Source of the DNA: Pelomyxa schiedti
Lineage: Eukaryota; Protista; Evosea
Direction of reading: 5' to 3'
Length of the DNA: 64,000 nucleotides
NCBI GenBank assembly: GCA_020536535.1
Contig: JAHLWZ010000225.1
Span: forward strand, 21,404 to 85,403
Each line of letters starts with the position of its first letter. Position 1 is the stretch's first letter. Position numbers and translations under genes: made by a program. The notes below the pieces were generated by a model that did no database searches, was not told the origin of the DNA, and worked only from the letters and a program-made list of their open reading frames with translations. Positions 1-59,362 of the stretch are shown here, one piece after another.

Positions 1-67
1 TGGAATCGAAACGGAACCTTTTTTCTTTTTCTTTCCGTACCAACCCCAATTTTTTTCTCAGACAGCG

Positions 68-1309: not shown

Positions 1310-1426
1310 CCGTTGGCCGCACTTTGGCCCATCCCCCGCGTACAAAACAAGAAGAGATGAAGCAACCCAAAGCCATTTCAAGTGGGGAAAACCAACAACT
1401 AGATCTTTTGCATTTGAGATTATACA

Positions 1427-1946: not shown

Positions 1947-2178
1947 GAGCTAACACCGCTGTTGTACTTTTGAAGGGATGACGACGGCCGGGCTTGATTT
2001 TACTTCAACAAATGCACGCAAAGATCTCGTTCTGTCGCCACTTATAAAGGCAATGTGCAGGGAACTGCCGTATCTTTGTTCAGTTGCTATTTTTGTCCCT
2101 GGATATTTGATACTAATAAAAGACCCTAAAACGATTCAAACAACAAACAAAATCAAAGAGAAAAAAAATCAAGGGGAG

Positions 2179-12401: not shown

Positions 12402-12615
12402 CGCCGGCGACTGTGACTATTAGATATCAGATCGATGATCGGTTTTTGGTTTCGAGACGTTTGGTTGAAATCCCAAACGCAAACTTACGGACGAGATCCC
12501 TCTTTGCTGTGCCTCCGGAATGTAGAATCTCAGGGACAGCACATTGTAGAGTTCAATTCATTCGGCCGTTAATTTTATTGTTGGTTTGCGTTGCTACGGT
12601 TTTATCTGGTTGGCG

Positions 12616-13567: not shown

Positions 13568-13698
13568 CTCAATCACATAAATAAGTGGTATGAATACATA
13601 GTTTAATTGTGATTTTGTCACGCACCACATATTTGCATCCCAAAACGATCTTTCACGAATCACGTTACCATAAACACCCAAAACAAGAGAAGATCAAG

Positions 13699-15078
13699 AT
13701 GCAACTGATCGAGCGTGCCACAATTCGGGGGGATCAGCAGTTTGTTGCGCTTGCTGTGGGGAAGTGGTCGCCGCGGTGCGGGGAGCATAGCGCAGCGAGG
13801 CTCCTGACCCACCACGTCCTGGTGGAGCAGCTCGGCAAGGAGTGGATCGCGGGGGCCGCCCGCTGCTGCGTCGCGTGGTGGCACAACTACGCCAAGGGGG
13901 GCACCGCCACGGTCGCGGCGGTGCGGGTCTCCCACACCCTCGGCGTCGTCGGCGCCCCGCTGCTCCGCGACCTCGCCCCCTGCCTCGGCGGCTCCCGCCT
14001 CGCCCTCGAGTGCTGGGTGACGGGCGGGGGCGGGGGCCTCGGCGGGGGGCCCCAGGGCGGCGGGCGCCTGCGGGCGGTGGCCGCGGCCGCCGAGGACATG
14101 CACTTGATGGACGTGGAGTCCGGGCGGCTGCTTGCCACTCTTGTGGGGAGGGGCAGGGGCTCGGTGGTGGCGAACAACAGGTGGGTGGTGCAGTGCTTCC
14201 CGCCGAGCTTCAGCGACGATAGGAGCCCGGACAACAATCTGAGAATATGGAAGCTACCCACGGCTCATTCTTGCTCATGTTCATCGTCATCGTCATCTTC
14301 TTCTTCGTCGTCGTCAACATCAACATCAGAAACTACTGCAGATAGTAGTAGCGTGCTGGTAGCAAAGATGGCGTCTGTCGACCCTGAAACACTGAGAATT
14401 ACGGCGAGTTGGATGAAGTTCGGCCACAGATACACTGCGTCATGCAATTGTGAGGATGGTCCTTGCGATGAGCTTCTGGTGTTTGGAATAACCCGCCTAG
14501 CCAGCCTAACATACCCCATCACATTTGGAGTCCTGCTGGATATAAACATAGCCAAGACGTATGCAAGTGGCGTTGCTGTTGTGAAGGAGGTTGCGAGGTA
14601 CCCCCTGCCCAGGTGGCCCTCTGTTGTGCAAAACGTGTTCTGTGATGAAGACGGAGTAAGGGATGTTATCTGCATCAACAACTCTGATGAGGGCACACTG
14701 CTGATGGACCCACAGGGCGTAACAACCACACTCCCTTGTCCTGGTACTTGTCTGGCTGCCGTTGATGACCGCCACTTGTTTTACAAATCCAAGTCGACTA
14801 CTCCCAATACAATCCGGGGTACTGGTTATTCTTCAACTTCTTCTTGCTTCATATACAACACTGTGCAACCACACAGAACCCCAGTGTGTGTGCAGGTTCC
14901 GCATACCACCCTCCCTATACTCTCTTCCTCCGGAATTTTTATGCTCTCCTGTTCAGTAGGAGACAAGGAGGAAGCAAACAGATTGGTGATGATGGATGCT
15001 TTGTCTGGGAGGATATTCCTCCAGACACAGAAATCTCTGACTGCCTCCTTTTTAAACGTGAATTTCCTATGCTTTTAA
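13699..15078 (+). CDS. Lineage-expanded hypothetical protein (N-terminal DQQFVAL...RCG..SAARLL motif, beta-strand-rich C-terminal region)
   Basis: Uninterrupted ORF from ATG 13699, GC-rich 5' part, poly-Ser insert, motifs ANNRWVV, LRIWKL, AAVDDRHL, MMDALSG. Confidence 0.75.
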   Translation: MQLIERATIRGDQQFVALAVGKWSPRCGEHSAARLLTHHVLVEQLGKEWIAGAARCCVAWWHNYAKGGTATVAAVRVSHTLGVVGAPLLRDLAPCLGGSRLALECWVTGGGGGLGGGPQGGGRLRAVAAAAEDMHLMDVESGRLLATLVGRGRGSVVANNRWVVQCFPPSFSDDRSPDNNLRIWKLPTAHSCSCSSSSSSSSSSSSTSTSETTADSSSVLVAKMASVDPETLRITASWMKFGHRYTASCNCEDGPCDELLVFGITRLASLTYPITFGVLLDINIAKTYASGVAVVKEVARYPLPRWPSVVQNVFCDEDGVRDVICINNSDEGTLLMDPQGVTTTLPCPGTCLAAVDDRHLFYKSKSTTPNTIRGTGYSSTSSCFIYNTVQPHRTPVCVQVPHTTLPILSSSGIFMLSCSVGDKEEANRLVMMDALSGRIFLQTQKSLTASFLNVNFLCF

Positions 15079-15199
15079 ATCAAACCACTGTAACCCGTGA
15101 CTGTCAATTCGCCTATCGACGTTCGGGGAATTCAGCTGAACTCCAAGAAGAGTTCTCACCTTAACTTGGAATTAGGGGAACCGTTTTCAGGCCTTTTTA

Positions 15200-15795
15200 A
15201 ACGCAACCCATCCGGACAACAAACAAAACAACCACTACTTCAACAACAGAGGCGGTTCCCACGACAGTTCGATGCCCAGCGTCACACATGTGCATGTGGA
15301 GTGGCATAGAGGCTGATTTGGACGCACACCTGGCAGAGTGCCCACATGCCACCGCGAACCCGAAAATCGATTTTCAAGTACCTCCTCGACCAGAACAGGA
15401 AGCTCAAGGAGACGAACGCCAGGCTGGAGGAGCAGAACACCAGGCTTGGCGATCAGATCAGCAAGTCCACGGTCAACCTGCAGTTCATTACTTTGTGGAG
15501 GGAAAGTCCTTTGGATTCTCTCATGTGTGCTGCATCCGCTTGTGCCCAGGTGACACATGTGGCACAGAGCAAAACGACAGAGTTAGCTGGAATTTGGATG
15601 GAACTGGTGGATACTGCACAGGGTGTAGCTGTGACCAGGAAAGATTTAAAAAACTCATATGTTGGGTTTAAGGGGCTAGAGAGAGTAAAGACTTTCTTTT
15701 TACAAAACTTGTGCCGAAGTAGATCAGATTTGGATAGTGACCACCACTTTGTGGGGTGTGCTGGGGTGTTGATGGTTGTTGTTTTACTTGTGTAG
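15200..15795 (+). pseudogene. TRAF-type zinc finger + coiled coil, frame-disrupted (pseudogene or sequence error)
   Basis: VRCPASHMCMWSGIEADLDAHLAECPH is in one frame; the coiled coil IFKYLLDQNRKLKETNARLEEQNTRL is in the +1 frame from ~15346. No clear upstream start. Confidence 0.45.
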
Positions 15796-16115
15796 TAAGG
15801 GAGAAAGAAGCCCGAATACTAAGCACAAGAGTTTATTGTTTATTACTTTGTTGCTTGAGTAACTACAATGACGTTGTTCCTAAAGGCACTAGAATCAGTT
15901 CAAGGTGTCCCCTGAATCTCCCTCCCAGGGTAACAGATTCCCGGTAGTTTTCCCAGACATCCATCAGTGATTAGAACCGGACTTGTAAACCTCGGGGCAA
16001 GGTTTTTGGGTTCTCAGCCAGACCACCTCTAGGCCTTGACAACAACGTTTTTTTTTCTTTATGATGCTTACATTTTATTGGTGACAAACAGGAGGAAATT
16101 AGACTGCGGGTTGGG

Positions 16116-26518: not shown

Positions 26519-28842
26519 TTAGCCTAAGGATCGGTACCACAGGTCAAGTTCCGCAGCAAAAGCACCTGGTCCTACAAGTGGCTTGCATTCATTTACAATG
26601 AAATCTGCCGGCAACCCCAGCCTCTTTACTGTGTAGGCGGCATTATGGGCCGAAGCTGTCACAATGGGCAGCAGATACTTCTTGGTGACTTCAGCTTCAA
26701 TTTCCGGGAACTTGTTCAGAATCATCCTACATGTGGATAGGCTAATGTAACTTAGGTCTTCATACCAAGTCCATTGGTTATAGCACTCGAGAAACTAAGT
26801 GATTTGTTAAATGGAATGGAAAGGAGGATACTGTTCTGTTACCTCTTTGAGGGAGATGTTAAAGCGGTCAATAAGCCAAGAGCAGCACCCACGTTTATTG
26901 TTTTCCAGCATTGTCTTCATAAGTCTGATTCCATTGCACCTGATGTGCGCGGATGTGAGATTGAAGTATGATATGATCCACTTCACAACTTTCGAGGAGG
27001 AAATTGTTGTAGCGGTGCTAAGGCAACTGGCAACAAAATCTGCAGAGAGAGTGAACTTGGATACAAATACCTTCACATCAGGCAAGTGCCAACTGAGCAT
27101 GGTTACAAAGGTGGATTTCAACAGTTCACTGTGCTCAAGCTGTTGCAGGCCTGGAAGCAAGGGAAATTCATACAGAACAAACATGAGGGTCTCCGGAGCT
27201 AACTTGGATGCTATCTCTTCGACGATAACTAGCAGTGAGGCTCCTTCCAACTTCCTCTCAAGGTGACAAAGAACCCACTTGAGGGAACTAATGCTCTCAA
27301 CACATTTCTTACAAAGCTCCACCACATTACAGGGATTTGAGTTGATAGAGGCCATAATGTGGCGGGTACCTTCAAGGAAGTTTGCAACAGAGATGTTTCC
27401 ATTGGCCAATGCACGGCAGAGGCAATTCTTCAGAGCGTCACAAGGAAGGGCCACCTTTTCACACAGCAGGCATACGAGTTCTACATTGTCATGGTGGTTC
27501 CCACAGGCCTGGTTCACGGTCTCCACTGTGGGTACTGCTCCACCCTGAATGTGCCACTCAACGTGCTTCAAGCTCTGGATTTCTCTTGTAGCTACTACGC
27601 AGTAGGAATTCAAGATTTGTTCCGTTGGTGTGATTTTTGCAGATTCAAAAATCCAGTGTCTCATAGCAACGTTGCTCAGTTTCTCCAGAGAACTCGGCAT
27701 CACAGAACCCCACATTAACGATACTACAACATCCTGCGCCAATTCTGGAGAACACTTCTCGTTGTGCACCAGGGTGTCCACTATCTCTTGCTCCAGTAAA
27801 GAACTGTATGCAGAGTGGAAGTGGAGGGTGGCCCAATTGATAATGCCAGGGTCGTTGCCCATTGCGCAGGCGTGGAGGCCGCAAAAGCAACACTTCCCCG
27901 CGTAACTATTTAAGGCCTCATCGAGTCCAAAAGTAGACACCAGCCACTGGGCTATCTCCAGATGCCCATTTGCCAGAGCCGCCTCCAGAGGTTGGTAAAG
28001 TTCCCACGGCTGCTTGATTCCAAACCTATCCACAGCCCACTGGAGTGCATCCAAGCTCCCAGCCTCGCACACAGCGTCGAGAATGTGGTGATTCCCCTGC
28101 ATGTCTTCCACCAAATCAGCATCATCCCCAACAGGCCACTTTACACAACATAAGCAACAGAAGCAATTCCCACACTTTGCTCCTTTTATCATTCCTCCTC
28201 CTTCTGTCTCTGTTGGTGGGAACAACAAAACCAAAAACAAAAAACAAAAAACAAAACAAACAAAAAACAAAACAAACAAAAAACAAAACAAACAAAAAAC
28301 CCAGTTAGCTTACTGCATAGATACATATCAGTAAATCAACCATTTCCATCACGATGGCCTATGCTTCCCCCCAGACACGGAGAGGCGCTGCAGCAACAGC
28401 AACAACGACAACAACAACCATCAACAAAGCACCTTGCGGACGCCGCGTGGCCGCCGTCGCACAGGCCGCACAGCACCGCCGCGCACTCCATCCCGCGGTT
28501 CCTGGTCGGCTTGCGCCCCAGCACCCAGTTGACGCACCTCCAGCTGTGCGCCTGCGCCGCGCACCGCGCCGCGAAGTAGCGGCTGTGGCGGCCCAGCAGG
28601 GGCAGCGAGACCGCGCGGCGGCACGCCAGCCCGACCAGCGGGAACATGGCGTCGGCCGCGCGGAACAGCCCCACGGCCGCCTGCACCGCGTCCACCGGGC
28701 GCCCCGCGTAGCTCGTCGTGGCCGGCAGGGGGTCCTCGAGGGGAGAAGAAGGGGGAGGGGGGTCCAGCCACCCCGCGCTGATCACGTGGTCCCACACGAT
28801 ACGGCACAGGAACAAGAAGCCTTGCTGCTGGGTAACGTCCAT
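26519..28842 (-). CDS. Ankyrin-repeat-like protein, same lineage family as 68..1309
   Basis: Exon 1 MDVTQQQGFLFLCRIVWDHV... (GC-rich), intron ~28205-28340, long exon with VCEAGSLDALQWAV, AALANGHLEIAQWL, RALANGNISVANFL. Two small introns then join ...NISLKE|FLECYNQWT|WMILNKFPEI...RSLG*. Confidence 0.8.
28221..28300. repeat. (A)nC / AAAAC-type microsatellite inside an intron
   Basis: aacaacaaaaccaaaaacaaaaaacaaaaaacaaaacaaa...; a T-rich tract on the coding (-) strand. Confidence 0.9.
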
Positions 28843-29023
28843 GGTCTACCTCCTTTGTTGTGCTTCTCTCGTATGCTGGTTCTCGTATGCTAGTGGTTGG
28901 TACTGTGGCTGTACGGACAACGACAGTTGGGTGGGCGACTTTCGGGAAGCCAGAGAGGGGCAATTAGGAGTCGATTGTGGATCTAAATCCAATCTAAACC
29001 CTTCAGTTGCATTGCCAAGGAAG

Positions 29024-30170
29024 ATGGCGGACACCAACACCAACGCAGATGCGACACCCACCGCCCCTACGACGACGACGACTGCAGCGAGTGCAGCCGC
29101 GCCGTCGGTAGTGGCAGCGACGTCGGCGTCGGGGGAAAAATCAACTGTGGTATCAACCACTGCTTCATCGTCCCCGGCGCAGGAGGAAGAAGAGCAAAAA
29201 AAGGTTGAAGAGGAACAGCAAAAAAAGACTGAGGCGGAGAGCCAACCGTTGGTGTCACCTTTTGGTCATGCCTTGCCAAAACCAATTCAGTTTAAAGACC
29301 GTGTGTGGCAATCCATGTCATTTTCCCCTCTTCTTACTTTGTTTTTGTTTTTCTGTTTTACTTTGTTTCGTGTTGTTTTTAAAAATAAAACGAAACCAAA
29401 AACAAAACAAAAAAAAAACCCCACAACAACGTAACGCAACTAATTACTTATACTGCATTTATAAATATATGACGTATGTTTGCAGTACCAGAGGCACCTA
29501 GTTCAGCAACTAGAAGAGGAATGGGGGCTAGAGGAAGGGGACTTGCTGTACCTCGCCATGTTGCAACGATGGCATCTGAGGATCCCTCTGTGAGAGCACA
29601 ACGCGCACAGAGATTCGGTATTCCAGTGCAAGAACCGCAATCCGAAATTCCACATCCACGCAATAGGGTACTTCCTTAAAACTGAGTAATTAATTAAGTG
29701 TAAGCCGGAGATATAATATTCTGAACACACATACAACTGACAAGCACAGCAGGCACCATTCCCATCACCCCAGAGACAACCCAAACAAGCACTGGCAGAT
29801 ACCGTCGTTGCAGAAGATGCCGAGCGCAGACGTAAGCGCATAGAAAGATTCGGTCTTCCTCCCGACGTTGGTACCAATGCCAAGCGCCCCCGTACCCCTG
29901 AAAAAGTAATTCTCCCCCTCCAAACTGCATCTCTTTATGTTCCTAATATCTTGTAGCAGACTGATTCCAAGCCCGTGACTATCCCACAAGAAACCAATGA
30001 CAACAAGACTGTACCTCCCACAAATACAACACAACCAGCTAATCAAACAGAGGAGACCCCCAAACCAGCACCGTCCACCACTGAGTAAAGAATTCAACGT
30101 TAACAAACTGTTTCTCTTTTTTTTTTCTTTTAAAGTCTCTCCAGTGGAAGTGAAAAAGCATAGGTCCTAG
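29024..30170 (+). CDS. THO1/MOS11/SARNP C-terminal-motif protein
   Basis: Repeated motif: EDPSVRAQRAQRFGIP and EDAERRRKRIERFGLP; Ala/Thr-rich N-terminus; last exon SPVEVKKHRS*. Confidence 0.7.
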
Positions 30171-46783: not shown

Positions 46784-47128
46784 TGTGTGTAGTATATATC
46801 CCATTTTTGTTGAACAAACAACAATTTATTTATTCAATTACTGCCACTTGTTCCTACCTTACCAGAAAAACTAAAATGACACACCACTTGTTGTTGTGAC
46901 TCTCTTTATAAGGTTCCCTTACTCTCTGATGGCAACAGTGTCTCCAGATCTGAATCTTGGAAGTCATGAGGTGATTGCCACATCTATCGTTTCTGAAGAA
47001 ATAAAAGATCAAGTTGGGCCATGAGAGGTGCTAGTCCAGCCAAACCTGGGTGCCCAATGAAAGTGGTTCTGGCCCCAGGCAATGGAGCCGGTAATGTGAA
47101 GAAGTGCTTGTGGTATGGTGACCTGGAG
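46611..47128 (+). repeat. First copy of a ~0.5 kb duplicated segment (second copy at 63495-64000)
   Basis: Near-identical from tcagtgagtttgatgtc to ggtgacctggag, with several substitutions and indels. Confidence 0.95.
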
Positions 47129-47752
47129 AGGAGAATGCAACAGATGAACATCCCTGTCACTGTATGGTATAGTTACTCTCTGACCCATTAAAAAAAACAA
47201 AATGCACACCAACGAAAACACATATACGACACGGCCAGCAACTACCCAGACCCAATTGTGGCCCATAAGTCTGTCTGGCTGCCATTCATGCGCGATGAGC
47301 TGCACTGCGACGAGCACACGATCGTAGTGGGGCACAGCTCAGGAGCCGTCGCGGGCCTGAGGCTGGCCGAGAGCGGCGTGAGGCTAGGGGGCCTGGTGCT
47401 GGTTTCGGCATATCACACGGACCTGGGTGACGAGGGCGAGAGGGCCTCTGGCTACTTTGACGACGAGTGGAGGTGGCCTGATATCGTGGCAAACTGCGGC
47501 TTCATTGCTCAGTATCACGGCTCGGACGACCCTCTTGTGGACATCCAGGAGGTAAGATTCTTGTGCGGCATACAACCAACCACCCACATTGTGACTGTGT
47601 TTCTGCAGGGCAGACATGTCCACGAAATGACCAACTCTGAGTACTACGAGCTGGACGACGTGGGTCATTTCCAGGTGTACTTCTTCCCCGAGCTCTACGC
47701 GCTCCTCAAGGAAAGGATCTGGGGATCCAGTTCTAGAAAGCACCATGAGTAA
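47021..47752 (+). CDS. RBBP9: RBBP9/YdeN family serine hydrolase
   Basis: KVVLAPGNGAG...WYG, VC|NYPDPIVAHKSVWLPFM, TIVVGHSSGA (GxSxG), LVSAYHTDLGDEGERASGYF, HGSDDPLV, GHF; two introns. Confidence 0.92.
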
Positions 47753-47869
47753 AAACACAATGTCCTTCCTATTTTTGGCAGAGGAGACTTCCCCGAAACC
47801 GATTGATGAACCCCATCAGAGCCACGTTCTTCCAAAAAAAAGAAAAATCAAACAAAACCGCCCTCAAAA

Positions 47870-50800
47870 ATGGGACGCTGGGGTGTGGTAGTTCTGGCAC
47901 TCGCTGGTATTGGTTTTGTTTTGTTTGTTTTGGATTGACACTTTAATTTGTGCCACATCTGACCCTGGAAAAGTTTGGTGGATTGTGGGGAGTGAATGTG
48001 GGATAACGAGTGCATCGCGGGCTGCTACTAACCGCACCGAGCAAGTCACAATTTTGGGATCGAGCATGTACTATTGGTTAGGTACACCATCGGTCAAAAT
48101 CAAGGGTAGTGCATGCGACATATCCTATCAGTCTTACGCTCAAATTAATTGCATGCCGCCGTATGGCGTTGGTTTGTCACCCCGCCCCACCCTTTTTTTT
48201 TTTTTTTCCTTTCCCACTTCTGCACCCACCCCCGTTTTCTTCTTCATTTTTTTTCTTGAAGGTAAGAATCTTGACCTGGTTATCTGGGTTTCGGGCGAAG
48301 CCTATACAAGTTCCAACTACTCATTCAGGGGTAACTGCTCCGTTTTTCTATTTTTCCCCGTCACCTTATGATTGGATGTTTCAGCTCCTGTGGTCAATTC
48401 CGTGGATAAAAGTTCTACTGTAGGTGGCCTTATACAAATACGTGGTGACAACTTGGGTTACTCTGGATCCAGTGCCTCCGCCACTATAAATGGACAAATA
48501 TGCGCAAATGTTATAGTATCCAGTTCGATGTATGCTACCTGTGTAGCTCCTCCAGGGACTGGTGCAAACCTGCCATTTCTGTTCAGTGCGCCGGCCTCGG
48601 GGTCAAATGCTCAGGTCGCAAGTGCATCTTTTTCCTATAATCGTATGTGATAATGCCAAACTAAAAGTGTTTTACAACTTAAAGCCCCCACAATCATCAG
48701 CGCCACACCAGCTCCCACAAGTGGACTGTATGTAACCACCATATCTGGAACGAATTTTGGAACTTCCAGCATTGGTCTTAGTGTTACAATTGCTGGCCAA
48801 TCTTGCTCAAATGCTACTGCTGTCAATCATACAACTATTACTTGTTTCCCACCACCTGGTGCGGGAATAGATTTGCCAGTAACAGTCTACGTTAAGTCAC
48901 AGAGTTTTACACACAGCAGTGCCTTTTCCTACCAGGGTATCTTTTTCCTATTGAACTTTTTTTTTCTCACTCCCAACAGCACCAACACTACTAAGTGTCA
49001 CTTCCCCCCCAACACAGGGGGGATTTGTCACTATTTATGGAGAGAGTTTTGGTCTGACAGGAACAACTGCTTTTCTGAACGGAAAAGAATGCACCTCACT
49101 ATCTGTATCTACCTCTGGAACTAAGATATTATGTATGGCCCCTCCTGGGGCAGGCCAAGGTCTCCCTGTAGTGGTGCACACAGTAGGTTATGTAACAGAG
49201 GCACAAATATTATCCTACCAAGGTATTGTGTTTTCCTCATATTCTGACTTCTCATTATTTCCTCAGCCCCAACGATTTCTTCGGTGACATTGGATACTCA
49301 TGGGAATCTTACTATTGAAGGAGGCAGTTTTGGTAGTACTTCTGATTGGATTGAAGTTCGCGTTGCAGTTTCTTGGTATAGAGTGGACTATGTATATGAG
49401 ACATGCCTAAATCCTCGACTCATTGTCCCTCATTCAATGATTACGTGCACTTCCCCATTTGGGTATGGCTCGAATAGACCTTTACTTCTGACAGTCTGTG
49501 AGACCAACTCATGGACTTGCCGAACTGGAAATGGCAACTTTGACTTTCCTGGTACATCATCGCTCCTTTTTCTTCTATTCACTTTGTTCAGCCCCCGTAG
49601 TTTTCAGTGCTACCCCCACAGCAACTGACACATCAGAATTGAGCACTATCATAGGTCGAAATTTTGGGTTTCCAGAAACTCCAGTGTCAGTGGAAATTGC
49701 AGGAAATCCCTGCTCTGGTGCAACGAAGCTGAATGCAACCACGCTAACATGCCGGCCACCTGAAGGTGTAAGTGGTCCAAAAACACTGCTGGTCACTGCA
49801 GGGTATTCAGGAGACCCAGGCGCTCAGACAGTGGCTTCTACGTTCTCATATTCTGGTATAAATCTAACTTGTCCCCTCTTTGACTCTGAGTCTAAATAGC
49901 ACCTGTAATCATGTATGGTGTGGGTGTTGCGGGAACTGAATATCAGGGAATCATTACTGGAGCAAATTTTGGGCCCATTGGTACCTCAGCTATTGTTGTG
50001 ATTGATGGAGTTCCCTGTACTTCAGCATACATTTCTATACCCCACACACAGATTACCTGCACACTAGACCCTGGGTCTGGTGAGAATGTTACTGTCAAAG
50101 TCTCTGTATCTGATGATAGTATCAATTGGATGACTTCCACAGCTAATGTTTTCCATTTTGATGGTTGCTAAATCATAGTCTTTATTAAATCTTTGACTTC
50201 CCTAAAGGTGTGGCAATAACCTCTGCAACACTGGTAGACACATCGGGAACGGAAACCACGTTTGTAACTGGGACACTATTTGTTCCCCCAGTACAAGTAA
50301 TAATTGATTCCGCAATTGCCTGCAAAAATGCCACTGTGGTGAGCTCTACATTGATTGAGTGTGTACCTGGCCCCGGGGTTGGGAAAAATCTGCCCATCTG
50401 TGTTGCAGCAGGCTCGGGGGTAACATGTGCTCCTGTCTTCTCATATAGAGGTTTGTAGTGACTATCTAGGGCTCCTTACGAAAAAAAAAAAAAAAAAAAA
50501 GCACCACAGATAGGAAGTGTCACTGGATGTGATACAACTGGAGGTCTAATTCACATTTTTGGCAAAAATTTTGGCTTTATGGTTGATGTCACCCTTGGTA
50601 CTGGTCCTTGCAGCCATAGTGAGAGCAATGATACACTGATAACTTGTCTTGCTCCCCCTGGTGTGGGTAAGACATCCATTATCATACTATCTCCGCCTTC
50701 TGGATCGCATGCACAATCTGTATCAGCTTTCATGTGCTATTCTGGTATTACTTTTTTTTTTACGAAAAAAACGAGTGGCTTATTGTATTGCACAGCTCCT

Positions 50801-53800
50801 GTTGTGTTTTCAGCCCAAGTCACAGACACAGATGGGTCACAACCTACTGTAATTTATGGAAAAAACTTTGGAGTTATTGGCACTGTTGTAGATGTTCTTG
50901 TTGGAAATCAAACTTGCGCGCTTGCAGAGGTTATATCAAACAATACCAAAATCTCATGCTACCCCCCTCCTGGAGTTGGAACTTTGCTCCCAGTCGTTGT
51001 ACGACCATCTCCTTATTGTGTATCCAGTGCCACTGCCTATGTTTTTTCCTATAAAGGTAGAAAGCAACTTCCTAAGTTCCTCACTTTGTCTAGAACCACA
51101 AATAACTTCTGGGGTAAAATATGGCACCTTTATCGTAATTTCTGGCACTAATTTCGGCCCAATAAACACATTGGTTCAAGTGAAGATTGAGAACAATACA
51201 TGTGTAAATGCAACCATCGCGACTGCATCTACCAGAATCACATGTAACGCAATTGTATCACACACGTATAGTGAGGTAGCTATTACTCTTGTTGACCCTG
51301 ATACCTTTGCCACTGTTTATTGTTCCAAATACATTTCATGGGCTGGTTTGTGCATTTAATACAATCAAACTGCTCCTTACAAATTTTTCTAAAGAACCAC
51401 TTATCACTTCTGTATCCATGACACCTACTGATTGTAATATGGTTCCACCCACACCAGTAAGAATACGTGGAGTAAATCTGGGTCCCATTACTGCCTCAGT
51501 AAATGTCACCATTGGGGGGCAGCAGTGTTCAGGTGCTTATGTGTCCATTGCATTCACAGAGATACAGTGTCTTCCTCCATGTGGAGTGGGACAGGACCTT
51601 CCACTTAATATGATTATTGATGTTGATGGAACCACTGTCTATACAAATTCACTGTTCTCTTATTACAGTATTTCCTCCATCTTTTTAACTTGGGATTAAT
51701 GGCATTCAAAGGCCCAATTATTATGTCAACAACGTCTTCCCCCACTCTAGGAGGAGAAGTCATCCTGTTTGGGGCAAATTTTGGCCCTGTTGGAAGTAAG
51801 GTGGTGGTCTTGATTGATGACAGAAATTGCACACTTGCGAATGTAACCATTGCACACTCAACGATTGTGTGTGTTTCTCCACCAGGAGCTGGAATTAACC
51901 TCACCGTTACCATTTTTTCCTCCTTCATGTCATCTGGGAGTCCCTCGTTGGGGAGGACCAACAACATTTTTTCATATCAGGGTATGCAATTATTCCTTTT
52001 CTCTCTAAACTGATATTCAAAGCACCTACGATAATCTCTGCAACTAGAGTGGATACAAAAATACCCAAGGCAACAGTAATTTCGGGAACCAATTTCGGTC
52101 CTTCCAACACCAATCTGGCAGTATCTGTTGGTGGCTATGAATGCAACTCGCCATCTTATATTACTGCACACACAACCATAACTTGTGTGCCTGCTCCTGG
52201 TGTTGGGGTCGACCTTATGGTTGTTGTTACAATTTCTGGCAAGTGGGGCTCCATTTCAGGTTCTGCACAGATATTTTCTTACAATTGTGTGTACTTGCAC
52301 TCCATGAGATGGCTAGTTAATACATACATGTTAGCTCCAACAATATTAAGTGTGAAGCCTGTAAATACATATGACGAGGAATCCATGACAGAGATTGAGG
52401 GAACAAACTTTGGACCCGCCTCTCTAACACTAGTAACTGTATGGATAAGTGGCATTGAGTGCAAAAATGCACAAATCCGCATGGACCACACACTAATCTC
52501 GTGTGTTCCTCCTTCTTTGACTGGGGCCAATCATGAGATGAACATTACCATTACACGCTCTGGGAGTGGGAAATCTACGAGTGTTATGCAGCGTATATTT
52601 TCATACACTGGTTACTTATTTTCTTGGTTTCGTTTTCTCAATTCAATTATCCAGCCCCAGCTATTCAGTATATTACCGGAAGTGACACAGAGGGATCCTC
52701 ACCCATCACCATTCTCGGAACAAATTTTGGAGACTTGACGGGGAACTTTTCTGTTTTTATTGAGGGCAAGTTGTGCTCAAACCCAATAATGACAGTTCCA
52801 CATTTCCAAATTGTTTGTACACCCCCAGCTGGATCTGGTTCTGAGCTTAGCTTATCAGTTTATGTACCAGCATATGGAACTGTGTATCCAACACCCCAAG
52901 TTGCCTATGGCTTCTTCTCCTACACTGGTGCTCTTCTTCTTCTTTTCAGTTTTTAACAGATGAAAAAGAACCTGAAATACTTGATGTTACTATGGCTAAC
53001 ACAAATGGCCAAGAGCCCATAATAATTAGGGTATGATAACACTCTTTATTATTACACTCATTACGCCTAGGGCAATAACTTTGGTCCCAGAAATTCCTCT
53101 GTTTTGATAACGATTGATGAAAATAACTGCTCCATGCCCTTCGTGCACAATCATACAACCATCACTTGTTACCCTCCTCCTGGCATTGGAGTAAAGCACC
53201 TACTTTATGCTTACATCCCTACTGGGGATCATGCTCAAGCAGCAAAATTCAATACCTTTTCCTACCAAGGTTCTCACTTAAGCTCGCCATCTTTTCTTAA
53301 TGATTACTCTTCAGCCCCGGAAATTTATAGTTCAACTCCTACTGATACCGAGGGGGGAATTGAAACTTTAATCACTGGAAAAAATTTTGGGGATTTCAAT
53401 ACATCCGCATATGTAACAATTAGTCTGTGCAATACTGCGAAACCCTGCCTATTCCCGAAAATCACTAAAGCACACTCTGAGATCACTTGTGTGGCGCCTC
53501 CCGGAATAGGTACTGGCAACTTGATTAGTGTCTGGGTGCCAACAGGTTCCAATCAAGTAGGCTCTGCCCCTCTGTTCAGTTATAATGGTATGAGTTCCCC
53601 CACTGTAGCAATTCCAATGTATCCTGTAGCCCCTGTTATTACTTATATCCCTCGTTGTACCACGACTCTGAGTTTGATAACTGTCCAAGTATTTACCAAA
53701 ACCTACAAAACTTAACAAACTTGAAAATAAGGGCATCAATTTCGGTCCTGGTCCCACATCAGGCGATTCGTACTCTATCATTTGTACTCTAGATAGTAGC

Positions 53801-56800
53801 ACTCGGATTACTGCAGATTACATCAATCACACTGCTTTTCGGATATACATGCCTGCAGGTGCTGGCAGAAGCCATACTATTCAAGTAAGGTGTTATGTGC
53901 AACTGAAAAAATAATATAAACCAGGTGTCTATTAAAGACCAAATGTCTAATGTGTACTATTTTGATTACTTGGGTATTCCCACTGATTGCAAAATCTTCA
54001 TACAAACCATTGTAGGTCCAACAGTCTTCTCTGCTACTAGTGTTGGCAGCAATGAATTTGCTGTCACGCAAATCTCTGGGATTAATTTTGGCCCTATTGG
54101 CACATATGTTGAGGTGTACGTTAACAACGCGACGTGCTCCGCGGCTACTGTTACGGTCGCTGATACTTTGATCACATGTATTCCCCCGCCTGGGACTGGT
54201 TCAGGGATATCGATGGTTGTAAACGTGAAAGGACAAACAACAATATGGACTTCTTTTTCTTACAGCGGTATGGCTTAATTATTCATCTGCATTCACATTG
54301 ACCATATCAATTAGATCCGGTCATCTTGAAGGTGTCATCACCAACAACTGATGGTCTGACAGATCTCATCATAGAAGGCTACAACTTCGGTCCCGTTGGA
54401 ACCCAAGTTTTAGTTCAATTTCTCAGCACACTTAATGAGACAACCGAGTGTCTCAATGCGAAGATAACCAGGGCGCACATAGAAATAACCTGTGAGCCTC
54501 CACCTGGGGTAGGAGCAGGCCTTACACTGATTCTATCTGTCTGGAGCATTGGAAGTACTCCTATTTCCACTTCAAGTGTTGTTTCATATGAGCGTATGAA
54601 TCTGGCTGTATCCTTCTTCCTTAATTTGCATGTTAGACCCTGTAATTGAGAATGTAACAAGTGCCGCAACAACTGGGCAGCAAGCAATAACTATAACTGG
54701 AAGAAATTTTGGTCCAGTGGGAGTTGCTATTGAGGTTGATATCAAACATGAAATATGCCAGGGTGCCCTTGTTGTGATACCTCATACAACAATTTCTTGT
54801 ATTCCACCTCCTGGAGTTGGTGCAGACCTGTTACTGGAGGTGAGTGTTGCAGGTCAGCTTGGAGAAGCCCGTTTTTCATACTCAGGTCACTTCATGAAAT
54901 AATTCCCTTCCTCATCTTTGAATAGGTCCCAAAATAAATTCTGTAACTAGCGCTAGTACTTCTGGATCTTCCTTTACAGAGATTTGTGGAACAAATTTTG
55001 GAAATAGCAGTAATGTAAGTGTACTCATTGCTGGGTTGCCATGCCGTGAGCCGGAAATAGTTGTACCCCACAGTTGTTTAAAGTGCTATGCGCCTGCTTG
55101 GACTGGGAAGGACCTACTATTGGAACTCATCGTTCCGAAAATAACCCCAGAAGTGACTTCCCAACGAGCCACTGCGAACTTCTCTTACCTGCGTATGAAT
55201 TCTTTACATTGGATTGAAGTTAACACTTTTCGAAAGCTCCAATTGTTACAGCTGCTACTCCAACGGACACAGATGGATCAACATTAACCACTATAACTGG
55301 AACGAACTTTGGGCCCTTGGGCACAACTGTTGATGTTAAAATCGGTGGCAGTGAGTGTTTCTGGCCGGAAGTCTCTGACTATTGTACAATAACATGTTAT
55401 CCACCAGCTGGTGTGGGATCAAATATTTCAGTAGAACTATGGGTACCTGCAGGCGATAGTGCACACACGCAGCACACAGAAGCTCGTGTCTTTTCTTATA
55501 ATGGTTTTTGGTTTCCCTTACTGAGGAAAACCTTCTAACTTTCCTTGTAGCTCCTATTTTCACTTATTCTACCCCAGTGGATACAACTGGAGGTCCAGTA
55601 GACATATATGGCAGTGGTTTCGGTCCGTATGGCACCAGTGTAGAAGTTCTAATTGGAAACACTTTGTGTGAGCAGGCTGTTGTATCGGCTCCACATTTTA
55701 CGATAAGTTGCTTGGCTGGGGAAGGCATAGGGCTGAAAAACGAGTTGAAAATTTATGTACCAGCAAACAGTAGCAACTTCGCAACAGGGTTCCTTTCTTT
55801 CAACTGTATGCCTAGTTTTTTAGTTCCTGGAAATAACTGTTTGTAGCCCCTGTCATAACCAGTGCCACTTCTGCCTGCACTGACGGCTCAGCCTATACAC
55901 TTATTTCTGGAACCAATTTTGGTCCGGTGAATACCTCGCTGTCTGTTACGATTGGGGGCCAACCTTGTATCAACGCATCAATCGAGATACCTCACACACA
56001 ATTCCGATGCTATCCACCCCCAGGAGTAGGGGCAAACAACACGATAAAGGTTATTATTCCTGCTGACGATGGGCAAGTGGCTTTTTCTCAGATATTTTCA
56101 TATTCTGGTAGGAAAAAACCTCATCTTAAGCTTTCTCATATTTCCAAGCTCCGTCAATTACAAATATTACCTGCCCTCCGACTACTGGCACCCTTGCCCT
56201 CATTGAGGTAAATTTTTTTTTTCCCCCTCAGAATGACAAGCAGCCCACGAAACAAACAGGGTTTGAATTTTGGTCCTGGAGGTAGATATTATGGTATTGA
56301 CTACCGCATTGATGAAGGCCAATGGCTGTCTTCTACCTGGGTCAGTCAGACTCAAATCATGATTCCTTTCCCAGTGGGAACTGGTGCATTCCACGTATTG
56401 CAAGTGATTGTTAGAGATCTTGCTTCCCCTTATGCGATTTTCAACTATGAAGGTTTCTATATTTTTCTGTAATGTAATCTAAAATGTGATCAGGCCCTAT
56501 CATCTCGGCAGCTACAAGGGCTGACACAGACGGCCTTATGCCAACGACAATCGAGGGTACAAATTTTGGGCCTTCTGGTACTTCGATTCTTGTTAAAATT
56601 GGGGATGGCAACTCCATATGCGCGAATGCCACAATTGATGCTCCTCATACACGAATATCATGTTATCCTCCTCCTGGTTCTGGTACTAGTCACGTTGTTC
56701 AAGTCTGGGTCCCTGTTGGAGCCAATGGCGTTATACAGTATAACTCGTTGAGCTCTATTGCGAAAGTATTTTCCTATAACGGTAATTGCTCTGGATCGTT

Positions 56801-59362
56801 TATTTTTAATGACTTATCCTTCTCAGCTCCGGTAGTGGACTCCGCTTCATCAGTCGGCACTTCTGGTGGCACCACAATAATAAAGGGTGGATTTTCTTTG
56901 TGCCATTTTTCTTTTCACACAATGCAGGCAAGAACTTTGGATTGAATTATACTTTGATCTCCGTAACTGTGGATGGAAAGCCTTGTAGTCCTGTTACAAT
57001 AAAAACTGCCCATTATGAACTTGCCTGCTCTGCACCTGCTGGAAAACGTGGGTATCACGCAATCATTGTAACTGTGGATGGGCAAAGTTCCGAGTCAAGG
57101 GTGATGTTAGAGTATACAAGTAAAATGAATACTGGACAAGTATCTGGTACAGTGGTAGGAGTGGTTGTAGGGACATTTGGTTGTGCTGCTGCCGTGGCAG
57201 CTGTTGTTGCTGTTTCTATAAAGAGGTTTTCTTTTTCTTGTCACTCACCTAAATCACGTTACACAGACGGAAAAAACTAGATCGGGCCACAGAAGTTGGA
57301 ATGAATGATCTTTTCCCTGAATCATCTGGATCTGTCATCTTTGAAGAAACTTTTGACCTCCCTGATTCAATGTGCGTGTATTTTGATAGACTTTTTTACT
57401 TATTTCCTATCAGAGGACTAGCTATAGACGAGTTTATTCTTGGGGTAAGACGGATGTAATTACTCCCCAACTCACTTGTTGTCAGATTTCCTGTTCAGAC
57501 CTGGGCTTTGGGCTTGACTCTCGGCAAGCAGAAGTGGACAAGATGATTCAAGAAACTATCACTCTCACCAATAGTACCAATAAAGCCGTTTCCTTCCGGC
57601 TATTTGCCCCTCTTTCCTACAGATTTCAGATCGCATTTGATCCGGAATCAAAAACAATAGAAGCGGTATTTTTCACCTGCTCCTCCTTCTCTTTACACCT
57701 TCCAGAACTCTGAAGCGCAAGTAGAAGTGCGGGCTGTCATCCTCTGCACTTGCAAGATAGATTCGCACATTACCTTAGCTGCTTCTGAAGGTTTTTCCCT
57801 TCTGCCGTGCATTTTCTCTAAGTAGCATAGGGCACAAATTTGGAGCAAAGAGCGTGCATCATACAAGTATTGGCTTTAAGTTGGAATCAGCATTATCTGG
57901 TAAAATTGACCCAGAGGAAATAGCATTGAAAAAGCCTCCTATAGGTGTGCAGCACTGAAATTTTCGTAAGAAGTAACTTCTTTAGGGGAAGGAGCTTTTG
58001 GTTTTGTGTACTGCGGTAATAGTGAATTTTTCTTAAGTTTAAATAACATTTCCAAGGTGAATGGAGAGGCCAAAATGTCGCTGTTAAAGTACCTACTTTT
58101 TGAGTGATTAAAAGTAACATCTAATAATAAATCAGATTTTGAAGTGCCAAGAATCTACAGTCTGTGATGTCAAGACGGATTTCCTGAAAGAAGTGTGTAG
58201 ATTCTCCTGCACTTTTCTATTTGATTACCAAGTTTTAGGTAAAAATAATGGAATCATTCCGATGTCCTCAGGTTTAACCAACTGCCTTTTGCGTTTCTTA
58301 TTTTACTGGCCGTAGATAGTGAACTTTATCGGAGCTGTCTATGTACCCACCAAGCTTGCAATTATTACCGTGCAGTTCTAGTTTCTGTTTGAAGAATTTG
58401 CTGAAGTTCACTTCCTTAGGAGTTCATGCAATTTGGAAGTCTGTCAACCCTTATTACAAAACAGTCATTGTCTATCGAGTTGAAGAGAAAGATGGTACTG
58501 GATTCTGCCCGAGGGATGAATTTCCTTCACAAAGTATGTATTCACTCAATTTCCTGTCTCATGCAAATTTGAAACACATAGAGTGGAGTTTTGCACAGGT
58601 ATACCCATTTCATGTATTTTCTTTTACTGACAAATGATAAGAGACTTAAAGCTCGACAATGTTCTTGTCTGTTCCTTGGATCCAAGTGCGAGTGTTTGTG
58701 CCAAGATCTCTGATTTTGGCACTACACGCAATGTACAGAGTCAAAAAGATACTTTGCATATGACCCAGGGGATAGGGTATATCACTGGCCTCCCATTTTT
58801 TTCTAAAATACCTCAGTACACCAGCATATATGAGTCCCGAAAGTATTGGCAATAGCGATTACAGTGCCGCTTCTGATGTATACAGGTATTTATTTTAAAG
58901 TATCTGTAAGCTGTTAAATTCAAGTACAGCTTTGCCGTCTTGATGTTTGCCGTTTTTTCTGAAACAGGTCTTATTGGCTATTTATTTGTGCACCTAGACT
59001 CACTCAATTTATTTAGAACCCTACACTGGCCCGGAATTCTCGTCAGCCTGGAGTACCTCTCCTCCAACCCATATTCACTCCACTAATAACCATTACCCAC
59101 AGGACTTGCCGAATACATAACTTCCGGAAAAGTATCTGGGTGTTTTCTTTTAATTTCCCTCACTTACCCACACCTTCTCATATCCAGAGGCTTGAAATTC
59201 CCGCGTCAGTTCCCCCTGATATCACCAAATTGATATCCGCATGTTGGGCCCAGGACCCCAGCACACGACCCTGTATTTATCTTCCAGCTTCCTCCTAAAT
59301 TGCTTACCTTTGCTTTAGCCTTTAGTGACATTGTGGCTGACCTTAGCAACGAAAAGGAGTGA
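47870..59362 (+). CDS. Giant type-I receptor kinase: signal peptide + ~29 IPT/TIG repeats + TM + juxtamembrane domain + TKL kinase
   Basis: Repeats of P-x-I-x-S...GG..(V/I)TIxGxNFG...(V/I)xIxGxxC...IxCxxPPGxG...FSY. TM VVGVVVGTFGCAAAVAAVVAVSI (~57150). Kinase motifs IGEGAFGFVY, NVAVK, IVNFIGAV, DSARGMNFLH, HRDLKLDN, KISDFG, GTPAYMSPE, SDVYSF, LISACWAQDPSTRP. Confidence 0.92.

What the first reader, a model, noticed from the sequence alone, without database searches (positions are those of the whole stretch)
47870..57120. ~29 IPT/TIG modules separated by phase-1 introns: a cassette-style receptor ectodomain
Seen: the ectodomain has about 29 IPT/TIG units (GxNFG count by eye). At every junction I checked, a 40-45 nt GT-AG intron sits at the same point, just after the terminal 'FSYx', in phase 1. 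Examples: 48643-48684 (AAT C|...|CC CCC), 48937-48979, 49223-49266 and 49552-49591. A few units also carry an internal intron. Established: symmetric 1-1 exons can be skipped, duplicated or shuffled without frameshift, and TIG-repeat surface proteins (TgrB1/TgrC1) mediate kin recognition in Dictyostelium. Inference: this may be a diversifiable recognition receptor, varying by exon skipping or by unequal crossover between modules, and signalling directly through its own kinase. That would be a candidate self/non-self or prey/symbiont sensing system in an anaerobic amoeba. The units are highly diverged from each other, so this is not a recent expansion.
Basis: partly seen in the sequence, partly recalled or inferred. 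Interest (0 to 1): 0.82.

Follow-up and report, generated by a model that had tools for sequence, protein, structure and literature searches.

The report
Giant 29-TIG-domain receptor kinase gene
This is an intact gene of the anaerobic amoeba Pelomyxa schiedti for a very long cell-surface receptor kinase with 29 immunoglobulin-like TIG domains, each in its own exon. That exon layout looks like a leftover of how the gene grew, not a device for making variable receptors.

Summary
On the + strand, 47870-59362, lies one intact gene of 55 exons and 54 GT-AG introns (32-90 nt, median 44). It encodes 3019 aa: signal peptide, 29 IPT/TIG units, one transmembrane helix, a cytoplasmic ASH/MSP-like Ig domain, and a TKL-type kinase with all catalytic motifs. 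All 29 junction introns (the signal-peptide junction plus 28 between units) are phase 1 and sit at FSYx|(A/G/S)PxI.

The window is Pelomyxa schiedti. At least nine annotated paralogs share this architecture, and 90 of 90 junction introns in four of them are phase 1.

The interpretation as a cassette-diversified recognition receptor is not supported:
- Units average 31% identity and have no DNA-level repeats.
- The closest paralog keeps the same 29 units in the same order, with the same odd internal introns.
- Skipping one unit would need excision of about 330-374 nt in a gene whose introns are 32-90 nt.
- Trinity isoforms of Mastigella homologs differ only by intron retention in the kinase part, never in the TIG array.

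The best reading is a constitutively spliced, rod-like receptor kinase. Its symmetric 1-1 exons record growth by tandem exon duplication. It is a new member of a known kind, and interest is modest.

The parts
47870..59362 (+). Whole gene: 55 exons, 54 GT-AG introns, 3019 codons, stop TGA at 59360-59362
   Evidence: Spliced model without in-frame stops. The exon pattern matches the paralog on L001.
47870..47906 (+). Exon 1: start codon and hydrophobic signal-peptide start (MGRWGVVVLALA), followed by phase-1 intron 47907-47973
   Evidence: This is the least certain splice choice in the model.
47974..48330 (+). TIG unit 1 (two exons, internal phase-1 intron 48172-48261 of 90 nt)
   Evidence: Unit HMM hit 47997-48176; model.
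48385..52927 (+). TIG units 2-16, one exon each (243-285 nt): 48385-48642, 48685-48936, 48980-49222, 49267-49551, 49592-49855, 49900-50163, 50208-50450, 50502-50744, 50796-51056, 51094-51345, 51395-51667, 51712-51981, 52023-52286, 52335-52610, 52655-52927. Separated by phase-1 introns of 37-51 nt.
   Evidence: Pfam PF01833 on each exon except unit 5; exon and phase table.
52960..53269 (+). TIG unit 17, split by phase-0 intron 53031-53070 just before GNNFG
   Evidence: The same split (62 + 202 nt) occurs in the paralog.
53315..53587 (+). TIG unit 18 (single exon)
   Evidence: Pfam PF01833, E = 1.8e-8.
53630..53973 (+). TIG unit 19, an atypical unit without the Cys pair, in three exons (phase-0 introns 53689-53731 and 53885-53924)
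   Evidence: The paralog has the same exon pattern, 59/159/49 nt versus 59/153/49 nt here.
54016..56107 (+). TIG units 20-26, one exon each: 54016-54267, 54315-54593, 54637-54885, 54926-55192, 55237-55503, 55551-55814, 55847-56107. Phase-1 introns between them.
   Evidence: Pfam PF01833.
56149..56452 (+). TIG unit 27, an atypical unit split by phase-0 intron 56208-56259
   Evidence: The paralog has the same 59 + 193 nt split.
56494..56781 (+). TIG unit 28 (single exon)
   Evidence: Pfam PF01833, E = 2.1e-6.
56827..57112 (+). TIG unit 29, membrane-proximal, split by phase-1 intron 56887-56927 after 60 nt
   Evidence: The 57-60 nt phase-1 split is conserved in P0001, P0003, P0016 and the L001 paralog.
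57146..57214 (+). Transmembrane helix GTVVGVVVGTFGCAAAVAAVVAV, followed by basic stop-transfer residues KRRKK
   Evidence: Read from the sequence. No dedicated TM predictor was run.
57414..57944 (+). Cytoplasmic juxtamembrane domain of about 140 aa (exons 38-41) with an ASH/MSP/PapD-like Ig fold
   Evidence: 53% identical to the P0002 juxtamembrane region. AlphaFold model of that homolog from an 18-sequence alignment has pLDDT 85.4. Foldseek top hits are OCRL ASH, CEP192 PapD-like, VAP and MSP. Weak Pfam PF22544 hits in the Acanthamoeba and Tieghemostelium homologs.
57986..59362 (+). TKL-type protein kinase domain in 14 small exons (17-135 nt) with GEGAFGFVYCG, VAVK, HRDLKLDN, DFG and GTPAYMSPE
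   Evidence: Model. Weak Pfam kinase hits on single exons. 68% identical to the paralog's kinase. The nearest solved kinases to the paralog's kinase include CTR1 and MLK4.

Best explanation
This is a constitutively spliced type I membrane receptor kinase of Pelomyxa schiedti.

The order of parts is: signal peptide, a rod of 29 IPT/TIG (Ig-like) domains, one transmembrane helix, a cytoplasmic ASH/MSP-like Ig domain, and an active-looking TKL kinase. Most TIG domains carry a conserved Cys pair, and the ectodomain has 38 N-glycosylation sequons.

The one-domain-per-exon layout with phase-1 introns at every junction is a historical footprint. The array grew by tandem duplication of an exon-plus-intron unit. 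Only symmetric (1-1) units can do that without breaking the frame, so the symmetry is a survivorship effect and not a present-day splicing device.

Since then each position has taken on its own sequence identity and is kept under purifying selection. The membrane-distal units diverge fastest between paralogs, so diversity lies at the level of the gene family (about 10 or more paralogs with roughly 10-34 units).

Inferred, not shown: binding of a ligand or surface (prey, particles, other cells or symbionts) at the distal units clusters the receptors. The kinases then trans-phosphorylate, and the ASH-like domain serves as a membrane-proximal docking or regulatory module.
For: Shown:
- Intact 3019-codon model.
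- Exons coincide with TIG domains.
- 29 of 29 junction introns here are phase 1, and 90 of 90 in four paralogs.
- Intron sizes are tightly distributed, median 44 nt in every family gene mapped.
- Units average 31% identity with no distance effect and no DNA repeats.
- The paralog on L001 is collinear unit by unit. Exon sizes match throughout, including the cytoplasmic exons of 31, 180, 85, 114, 30, 32, 57, 33, 54, 114, 17, 135, 69, 38 and 36 nt, and the internal introns of units 17, 19, 27 and 29.
- Identity to the positional counterpart is 25-62%, against 31% between non-corresponding units. It is lowest in units 1-2 and is 68% in the kinase.
- Family members differ in the number of TIG matches found, roughly 10-34.
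- The Planoprotostelium TIG-kinase has multi-unit exons and mixed phases, so the layout is specific to this lineage.
- Mastigella isoforms vary only by intron retention in the kinase region.
- All kinase catalytic motifs are present, and the kinase has TKL affinity.
- The juxtamembrane domain has an ASH/MSP fold.

Established background:
- Symmetric 1-1 exons and domain-exon alignment are classical signatures of exon duplication and shuffling (PMC6547436, PMC5400394).
- Intron retention, not exon skipping, dominates outside animals (PMC6142364).
Against: - No transcript data for P. schiedti itself could be examined, so low-level or condition-specific exon skipping is not excluded.
- The Mastigella isoforms are short-read Trinity assemblies from another genus, and repeat arrays are hard to assemble.
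- The ligand, localisation and kinase activity are all inferred.
- The protein was not found in the protein collections searched, so there is no independent gene model to compare.
- Several paralog gene models are fused, split or cut by contig ends, which blurs the true range of unit numbers.
Confidence: 0.75

Rival explanations
1. The symmetric 1-1 TIG exons are used as cassettes, and regulated or stochastic exon skipping yields receptor isoforms with different module sets. This would diversify recognition of self, prey or symbionts within one cell line.
For: Every single-exon unit is frame-neutral (lengths are multiples of 3, flanked by phase-1 introns) and encodes exactly one whole domain. 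Any skip would therefore give a foldable in-frame protein. Related TIG proteins (TgrB1/C1) mediate kin recognition in Dictyostelium (10.1101/2025.08.01.668227).
Against: - Frame neutrality is required for growth by exon duplication, so it carries no information about present use.
- Skipping needs excision of 330-374 nt, whereas introns of this gene are 32-90 nt and family introns have a median of 44 nt.
- The Mastigella isoform sets show no ectodomain variation.
- Position-specific conservation of all units between paralogs implies that each unit is needed.
- Exon skipping is rare and not frame-biased outside animals (PMC6142364).
- Tgr diversity is allelic, not splicing-based (10.1101/2025.08.01.668227).
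Confidence: 0.06
2. Germline diversification. Module number and order vary between individuals through unequal crossover or gene conversion among modules or paralogs, giving a polymorphic kin or partner recognition locus analogous to tgr genes.
For: Family members differ widely in TIG unit number (about 10-34) and in where split units sit. Modules were therefore gained and lost over evolutionary time. The ectodomain evolves faster than the kinase (45% versus 68% identity).
Against: - No stretch of DNA similarity longer than 54 nt exists between modules, and those matches are 60-86% identical, so there is no substrate for homologous unequal exchange.
- There is no sign of homogenisation between neighbouring units.
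- The closest paralog retains an identical 29-unit order.
- No second TIG gene lies in the 64-kb window.
- Part of the apparent variation in unit number is an annotation artefact.
Confidence: 0.1
3. The protein is mainly a structural or adhesive surface protein (a glycocalyx or stalk component). The kinase is only a regulatory appendage or is inactive.
For: Giant TIG arrays without kinases are common in protists, including Protostelium, Entosiphon, Mesostigma and Fabomonas, and P. schiedti has its own kinase-less TIG gene KAH3746092.1 next to a paralog.
Against: All catalytic kinase motifs are intact, and the kinase is the most conserved part of the protein between paralogs at 68%. The ASH-kinase module is conserved across Amoebozoa behind many different ectodomains, which is typical of signalling receptors.
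Confidence: 0.08

Closest known systems
Paralogous TIG-array kinases annotated in Pelomyxa schiedti (KAH3758301.1 downstream half, KAH3765385.1, KAH3746093.1, KAH3766163.1, KAH3760936.1, KAH3756150.1 and others) and Mastigella eilhardi transcripts
   Same: Same architecture: TIG array, TM, ASH-like domain, TKL kinase. Same one-unit-per-exon layout with phase-1 junction introns. 44-63% identity in the cytoplasmic part to the P. schiedti paralogs. The closest paralog is collinear over all 29 units.
   Different: This gene's own product was not found in the protein collections searched. Unit numbers differ (about 10-34), and the distal units are strongly diverged.
Dictyostelium receptor-like TKL kinases (the DRK family member rk3 with an extracellular TIG domain, PMC1420674) and the amoebozoan 'ectodomain-TM-Ig-like-TKL kinase' chassis (D. 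discoideum DDB_G0278879 and DDB_G0270550, Tieghemostelium, Acanthamoeba, Entamoeba TMK-like proteins)
   Same: Signal peptide, one TM helix and a C-terminal TKL kinase. The ASH-like-plus-kinase module aligns at 31-42% identity over most of its length. rk3 is reported to carry a TIG ectodomain.
   Different: rk3 is described with an extracellular TIG domain, not 29 of them, and I did not align it here. The roughly 1600-aa Dictyostelium hits show no Pfam TIG domain, and they are too long to be DrkA-C, which are 642-749 aa (PMC7003747). Acanthamoeba homologs carry peroxidase/DOMON or periplasmic-binding-type ectodomains instead.
Dictyostelium TgrB1/TgrC1 kin-recognition proteins
   Same: Amoebozoan single-pass surface proteins with IPT/TIG ectodomains.
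   Different: As I recall, Tgr proteins have a few TIG domains and no kinase. By my recollection of the tgr literature, they work as an adjacent, co-evolving, highly polymorphic gene pair. Here there is an intrinsic kinase, 29 units and no partner TIG gene in the window, and polymorphism is untested.
Metazoan modular extracellular genes built from symmetric 1-1 exons (Patthy-type exon shuffling, for example sponge aggregation factor genes, PMC5400394), and MET/RON/plexin receptors with IPT repeats
   Same: Domain boundaries coincide with phase-1 introns. The extreme phase bias (99% phase 1 in the sponge aggregation factor genes) is read there as a signature of exon duplication and shuffling. 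MET combines IPT repeats with a cytoplasmic kinase.
   Different: This is a non-animal lineage with 40-nt introns. There is no Sema or PSI domain: the array starts 12 aa after the start codon. The kinase is a TKL with HRDLKLDN, not a tyrosine-kinase-group enzyme.
Planoprotostelium fungivorum TIG-array receptor kinases (PRP82680.1 and the 5769-aa P0300)
   Same: Dozens of TIG repeats plus a C-terminal kinase in another amoebozoan.
   Different: The kinase is only 34% identical, has an HRDLAARN motif, and lacks a detectable ASH-like juxtamembrane domain. Exons of up to 3689 nt span many units and intron phases are mixed. This architecture was assembled independently or restructured.

Membership tests
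IPT/TIG domain repeat protein (Pfam PF01833) | Sequence match to the TIG profile above the curated threshold | tested here: met
   24 of 25 unit exons matched at E <= 0.0015, and 21 of them exceeded the 20.9-bit gathering score. Many matches cover model positions 1-84 of 84. Unit 5 matched only the in-house unit HMM.
IPT/TIG domain repeat protein (Pfam PF01833) | Ig-like beta-sandwich fold of the units | not tested
   No structure prediction was run on the TIG units. The fold is inferred from the Pfam match.
Receptor-type TKL protein kinase (amoebozoan receptor-like kinases) | Signal peptide, single transmembrane helix and C-terminal ePK domain | tested here: met
   There is a hydrophobic N-terminus, a 23-residue hydrophobic helix followed by KRRKK, and a kinase at the C-terminus. 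Topology was read from the sequence, without a dedicated predictor.
Receptor-type TKL protein kinase (amoebozoan receptor-like kinases) | Complete catalytic motifs (Gly loop, VAxK, HRDxxxxN, DFG, APE-like) | tested here: met
   GEGAFGFVYCG, VAVK, HRDLKLDN, DFG and SPE are all present in the spliced product.
Receptor-type TKL protein kinase (amoebozoan receptor-like kinases) | Kinase domain groups with TKL kinases | tested here: inconclusive
   The kinase of the closest paralog (68% identical) scores highly against the TKL kinases CTR1 and MLK4 among solved structures. No phylogeny was made, and the window's own kinase could not be submitted as one piece because it is split into 14 exons.
Dictyostelium DRK family (DrkA-C / rk1-3) | Orthology or close homology to DrkA-C | not tested
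   DrkA-C are 642-749 aa (PMC7003747), which lies outside the length range of the searches run. The Dictyostelium hits found (DDB_G0278879, DDB_G0270550, about 1600 aa) are other proteins.
Tgr-type kin-recognition system | Adjacent pair of TIG-protein genes acting as ligand and receptor | tested here: not met
   A unit HMM scan of all six frames of the 64-kb window finds TIG units only in this gene.
Tgr-type kin-recognition system | Extreme allelic polymorphism between strains | not testable with these tools
   Only one assembly (GCA_020536535.1) is available, with no population data.
Cassette-exon diversified receptor (alternative module usage) | Transcript isoforms that differ by whole modules | tested here: inconclusive
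   No P. schiedti transcripts could be examined. In four Mastigella eilhardi homolog groups the isoforms share identical ectodomains and differ only by intron retention in the kinase part.
Cassette-exon diversified receptor (alternative module usage) | Frame-neutral exons that each encode a complete module | tested here: met
   All 24 single-exon units are 243-288 nt, multiples of 3, and are flanked by phase-1 introns. This is necessary for cassette use but not sufficient.
MET/RON/plexin-type receptors | N-terminal Sema and PSI domains before the IPT repeats | tested here: not met
   TIG unit 1 begins 12 residues after the start codon, leaving no room for a Sema domain.

The most novel reading that the evidence does not exclude
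Pelomyxa actually uses the 1-1 TIG exons as skippable cassettes. One gene would then give a population of receptor isoforms of different length or specificity. That would be a protist analogue of splice-diversified recognition receptors, possibly tuned to its prokaryotic symbionts or prey.
Probability: 0.05. Interest if true: 0.8.

Novelty: new member of a known kind. Interest (0 to 1): 0.3.

Why it matters
The gene is a clean non-animal example of a large extracellular protein built from symmetric phase 1-1 domain exons. All 29 junctions here are phase 1, as are 90 of 90 in four paralogs. That pattern is usually discussed for metazoan exon shuffling.

It also documents a family of giant TIG-array receptor kinases in Archamoebae. 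These amoebae live with prokaryotic symbionts, and their surface sensing is unstudied.

For the scan, the lesson is that exon symmetry in a tandem domain array is expected from how such arrays grow. It should not by itself be read as evidence for splicing-based diversification.

If the distal units of the paralogs prove to bind different targets, the family would be a candidate germline-encoded recognition repertoire.

Tried and rejected
1. A naive longest-ORF splice model kept in-frame, stop-free introns and ran past the true stop. I replaced it with a codon and splice-site scored model plus hand curation.
2. I looked for the window's own protein in the collections: by an exhaustive profile search, a region search with the closest paralog, BLAST against all retrieved proteins, and an exact look-up of a neighbouring ORF. 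It was not found.
3. I tested for synteny between the window and the closest paralog's locus with tblastx and blastn. There was none outside the gene, so these are dispersed paralogs.
4. I looked for higher-order periodicity or similarity between neighbouring units. There was none.
5. Long annotated 'introns' (101-275 nt) in the paralogs could have been skipped modules. They turned out to be assembly gaps or mis-annotated coding pieces.
6. The exact splice map of P0005 failed at aa 1962, and I did not pursue it.
7. I considered membership in the Dictyostelium DRK family, but the Dictyostelium hits are too long to be DrkA-C.
8. The Planoprotostelium TIG-kinase was checked as a possible ancestor of the exon layout and rejected, because it has multi-unit exons and mixed phases.
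9. The spliced 3019-aa protein has no reference, so I did not submit it whole to any database tool. Single exons and paralog proteins were used instead.

Full report
**What is in the sequence**

The region is eukaryotic, with very short introns. I built a spliced model by dynamic programming over codon and splice-site scores, then corrected it by hand.

- The gene lies on the + strand from ATG 47870 to TGA 59360-59362.
- It has 55 exons and 54 GT-AG introns of 32-90 nt (median 44), and an uninterrupted reading frame of 3019 codons.
- The product has, in order: a hydrophobic N-terminus, 29 repeat units of 81-96 aa, a 23-residue hydrophobic helix followed by KRRKK, a cytoplasmic region of about 190 aa, and a protein kinase domain.
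- The kinase domain carries GEGAFGFVYCG, VAVK, HRDLKLDN, DFG and GTPAYMSPE.
- Pfam PF01833 (IPT/TIG) matched 24 of the 25 unit exons I submitted. Many matches run from model position 1 to 84 of 84, so the exon is the domain.
- An HMM made from the units finds nothing else in the 64-kb window on either strand.

**Checking the observation**

- All 29 junction introns are phase 1. These are the signal-peptide junction plus 28 between units. They fall directly after the FSYx motif and before (A/G/S)PxI.
- The other 25 introns of the same gene are phase 0, 1 and 2 in 12, 8 and 5 cases (Fisher p = 2e-8 for junction versus other introns). The junction introns descend from one another, so this is not a count of independent events.
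- Five units carry internal introns. Three of those introns are phase 0 and sit just before the GxNFG motif.
- The units are old. Mean pairwise identity is 31%, the maximum is 50.6%, and identity does not depend on distance along the array.
- Tandem Repeats Finder detects no unit-sized repeat. The longest DNA matches between units are 20-54 nt at 60-86% identity, over the conserved protein motifs.

**Organism and family**

- A neighbouring ORF (26810-28195, minus strand) is 99% identical to Pelo_2920 of Pelomyxa schiedti.
- GC content and intron size match P. schiedti loci.
- I searched a profile of 23 units against 1.84 billion representative proteins. Among the top hits was a family with the same architecture: nine P. 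schiedti clusters and several Mastigella eilhardi transcripts.
- The window's own product was not found in any collection.
- The closest relative is the downstream 2860 aa of KAH3758301.1. That GenBank model fuses two genes.

**The decisive comparison**

I mapped the exact exon structure of that paralog on its contig.

- It has the same chain of exons. The cytoplasmic exon sizes match those of the window gene: 31, 180, 85, 114, 30, 32, 57, 33, 54, 114, 17, 135, 69, 38 and 36 nt in both.
- The idiosyncratic internal introns also match: unit 17 (62 + 202 nt versus 71 + 199), unit 19 (59/159/49 versus 59/153/49), unit 27 (59 + 193 in both) and unit 29 (60 nt, phase 1, in both).
- For 22 of the 29 units, the best match in the paralog locus is the collinear unit.
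- Identity to the positional counterpart is 25-62%, against 31% between non-corresponding units. Identity rises from the distal end (units 1-2: 25-31%) to the membrane-proximal end (units 26-29: 50-62%). The kinase is 68% identical.
- The flanks are not syntenic, so these are dispersed paralogs.

Number, order and individuality of the modules have therefore been stable since a duplication old enough to leave 45% identity.

In three further paralogs plus this one, 90 of 90 motif-defined junction introns are phase 1, and the median intron is 44 nt. A Planoprotostelium TIG-array kinase has exons of up to 3689 nt spanning many units, with mixed phases. The one-unit-per-exon layout is thus a feature of this archamoebal family and not of TIG arrays in general.

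**Does the cassette idea hold?**

It is true that each single-exon unit is frame-neutral and encodes one whole domain. But that is also a precondition for an array to grow by tandem duplication of exon plus intron. It cannot distinguish history from present use.

Four observations speak against present use:

1. There is no DNA homology between modules that could support unequal crossover, and neighbouring units show no homogenisation.
2. The array is frozen between paralogs.
3. Skipping a unit would require removing 330-374 nt. Every intron in this gene is 32-90 nt, and 93% of the annotated introns in the mapped paralogs are 30-60 nt. The few longer annotated 'introns' are assembly gaps or mis-annotations. 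Across eukaryotes, exon skipping is frequent and frame-biased only in animals, and intron retention dominates elsewhere (PMC6142364).
4. In four Mastigella eilhardi homolog groups with several Trinity isoforms, the ectodomains are identical. All differences lie in the kinase-coding part and look like intron retention. One example is a 16-aa in-frame insertion at SGK|RL, the position of window intron 59132-59187.

This transcript evidence comes from another genus and from short reads, so it is supportive and not conclusive.

**What evolution did do with the modules**

Family members differ in the number of TIG matches found (about 10 to 34) and in where the split units sit. Modules were therefore gained and lost over long times. 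Only the membrane-proximal unit, with its 57-60 nt phase-1 split, is recognisably the same in all members.

Part of the apparent variation is an annotation artefact:
- One gene is split into 666-aa and 2218-aa models only 26 nt apart.
- One gene is cut by a contig end.
- One model fuses two genes.

**How it probably works**

Shown: an intact receptor-type architecture, a complete catalytic motif set, and the kinase as the most conserved part.

The juxtamembrane domain of the closest paralog is 53% identical to the window's. I modelled it from an 18-sequence family alignment, giving pLDDT 85. It folds as an ASH/MSP/PapD-like Ig sandwich, with top Foldseek hits OCRL ASH, CEP192 PapD-like domain 7, VAP and MSP. 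Pfam gives weak HYDIN/VesB-like Ig hits in the Acanthamoeba and Tieghemostelium homologs.

The same ASH-like-plus-TKL module sits behind quite different ectodomains in Acanthamoeba (peroxidase/DOMON, periplasmic-binding type). It also sits behind ectodomains I did not characterise in Dictyostelium and Entamoeba homologs. The paralog's kinase scores highly against the TKL kinases CTR1 and MLK4 among solved structures.

Inferred:
- The 29 Ig-like domains form a long glycosylated rod (38 sequons, and a conserved Cys pair in most units).
- The fast-evolving distal units bind a ligand or surface.
- Clustering activates the kinase.

**Comparison with what is known**

- The Dictyostelium kinome paper describes TKL receptor kinases, including rk3 with an extracellular TIG domain (PMC1420674). 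A TIG ectodomain on a TKL receptor kinase is therefore a known amoebozoan design.
- Symmetric 1-1 domain exons and domain-exon alignment are classical (PMC6547436). Sponge aggregation factor genes show 154 of 155 introns in phase 1, and this is read as a signature of exon shuffling (PMC5400394).
- Tgr kin-recognition proteins share the TIG ectodomain. As I recall, they lack a kinase. By my recollection, they work as a polymorphic adjacent gene pair (10.1101/2025.08.01.668227). No partner gene is present here.
- MET and plexin membership fails because there is no Sema or PSI domain.

**Verdict**

It is a new member (apparently without a product on record in the collections searched) of a known kind of receptor kinase. 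Its textbook exon-duplication architecture is unusually clean for a protist. Interest is 0.3. The splicing-diversity reading remains possible at about 5%, and RNA-seq junction counts on this locus would settle it.

Noticed in passing
L001:10001-28253 (P. schiedti JAHLWZ010000790.1): GenBank protein KAH3758301.1 (4705 aa) is a fused model. After aa 1841, a Q/N/H-rich tail, the annotation jumps about 750 nt into the middle of the first unit of a second gene. Only the downstream 2860 aa form the paralog of the window gene.
   Followed up: partly
window 57414-57944; P0002:4290-4445: The cytoplasmic juxtamembrane domain has an ASH/MSP/PapD-like Ig fold. Together with the TKL kinase it forms a module conserved behind very different ectodomains in Pelomyxa, Mastigella, Dictyostelium, Tieghemostelium, Acanthamoeba and Entamoeba. 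I found no description of this chassis in the papers searched.
   Followed up: partly
window 59132-59187 (intron between SGK and RLEIP): Mastigella eilhardi isoforms of a homolog differ by a 16-aa in-frame insertion at exactly this intron position. This suggests conserved intron retention in the kinase C-lobe.
   Followed up: partly
window 48172-48261, 50745-50795, 52287-52334, 53270-53314, 53588-53629, 53974-54015, 56782-56826, 57378-57413: Eight of the 54 introns are multiples of 3 and free of stops, so retaining them would insert 12-30 aa in frame. Six of them lie between TIG units. By my rough estimate the number is about what chance predicts. They mislead ORF-based gene models.
   Followed up: yes
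window 1-2000, 12000-16000, 28000-30000: These are GC-rich islands (52-60% GC against about 43% elsewhere) with long intron-free ORFs. They include an ankyrin-repeat ORF (68-1309) with overlapping ORFs on both strands, and a 489-aa ORF (13609-15078) with no Pfam match. Their origin is unknown.
   Followed up: no
window 26810-28195 (-): This ankyrin-repeat ORF is 99% identical to P. schiedti hypothetical protein Pelo_2920, whose contig is 85,403 nt long. This identifies the source organism of the window.
   Followed up: yes
L003:1-2349 (-) and L004:608-2975 (+): Kinase-less TIG-array genes lie next to two kinase paralogs. KAH3746092.1 (2180 aa, named 'zymogen granule membrane glycoprotein') is divergent from KAH3746093.1. 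A 666-aa TIG model ends 26 nt before KAH3766163.1 and is probably the split-off N-terminus of the same gene.
   Followed up: no
window 47000-47755 (+): Immediately upstream lies a small alpha/beta-hydrolase-like gene with short introns, giving a weak Pfam Abhydrolase_6 hit on exon 47240-47548. It ends about 120 nt before the receptor's start codon.
   Followed up: no
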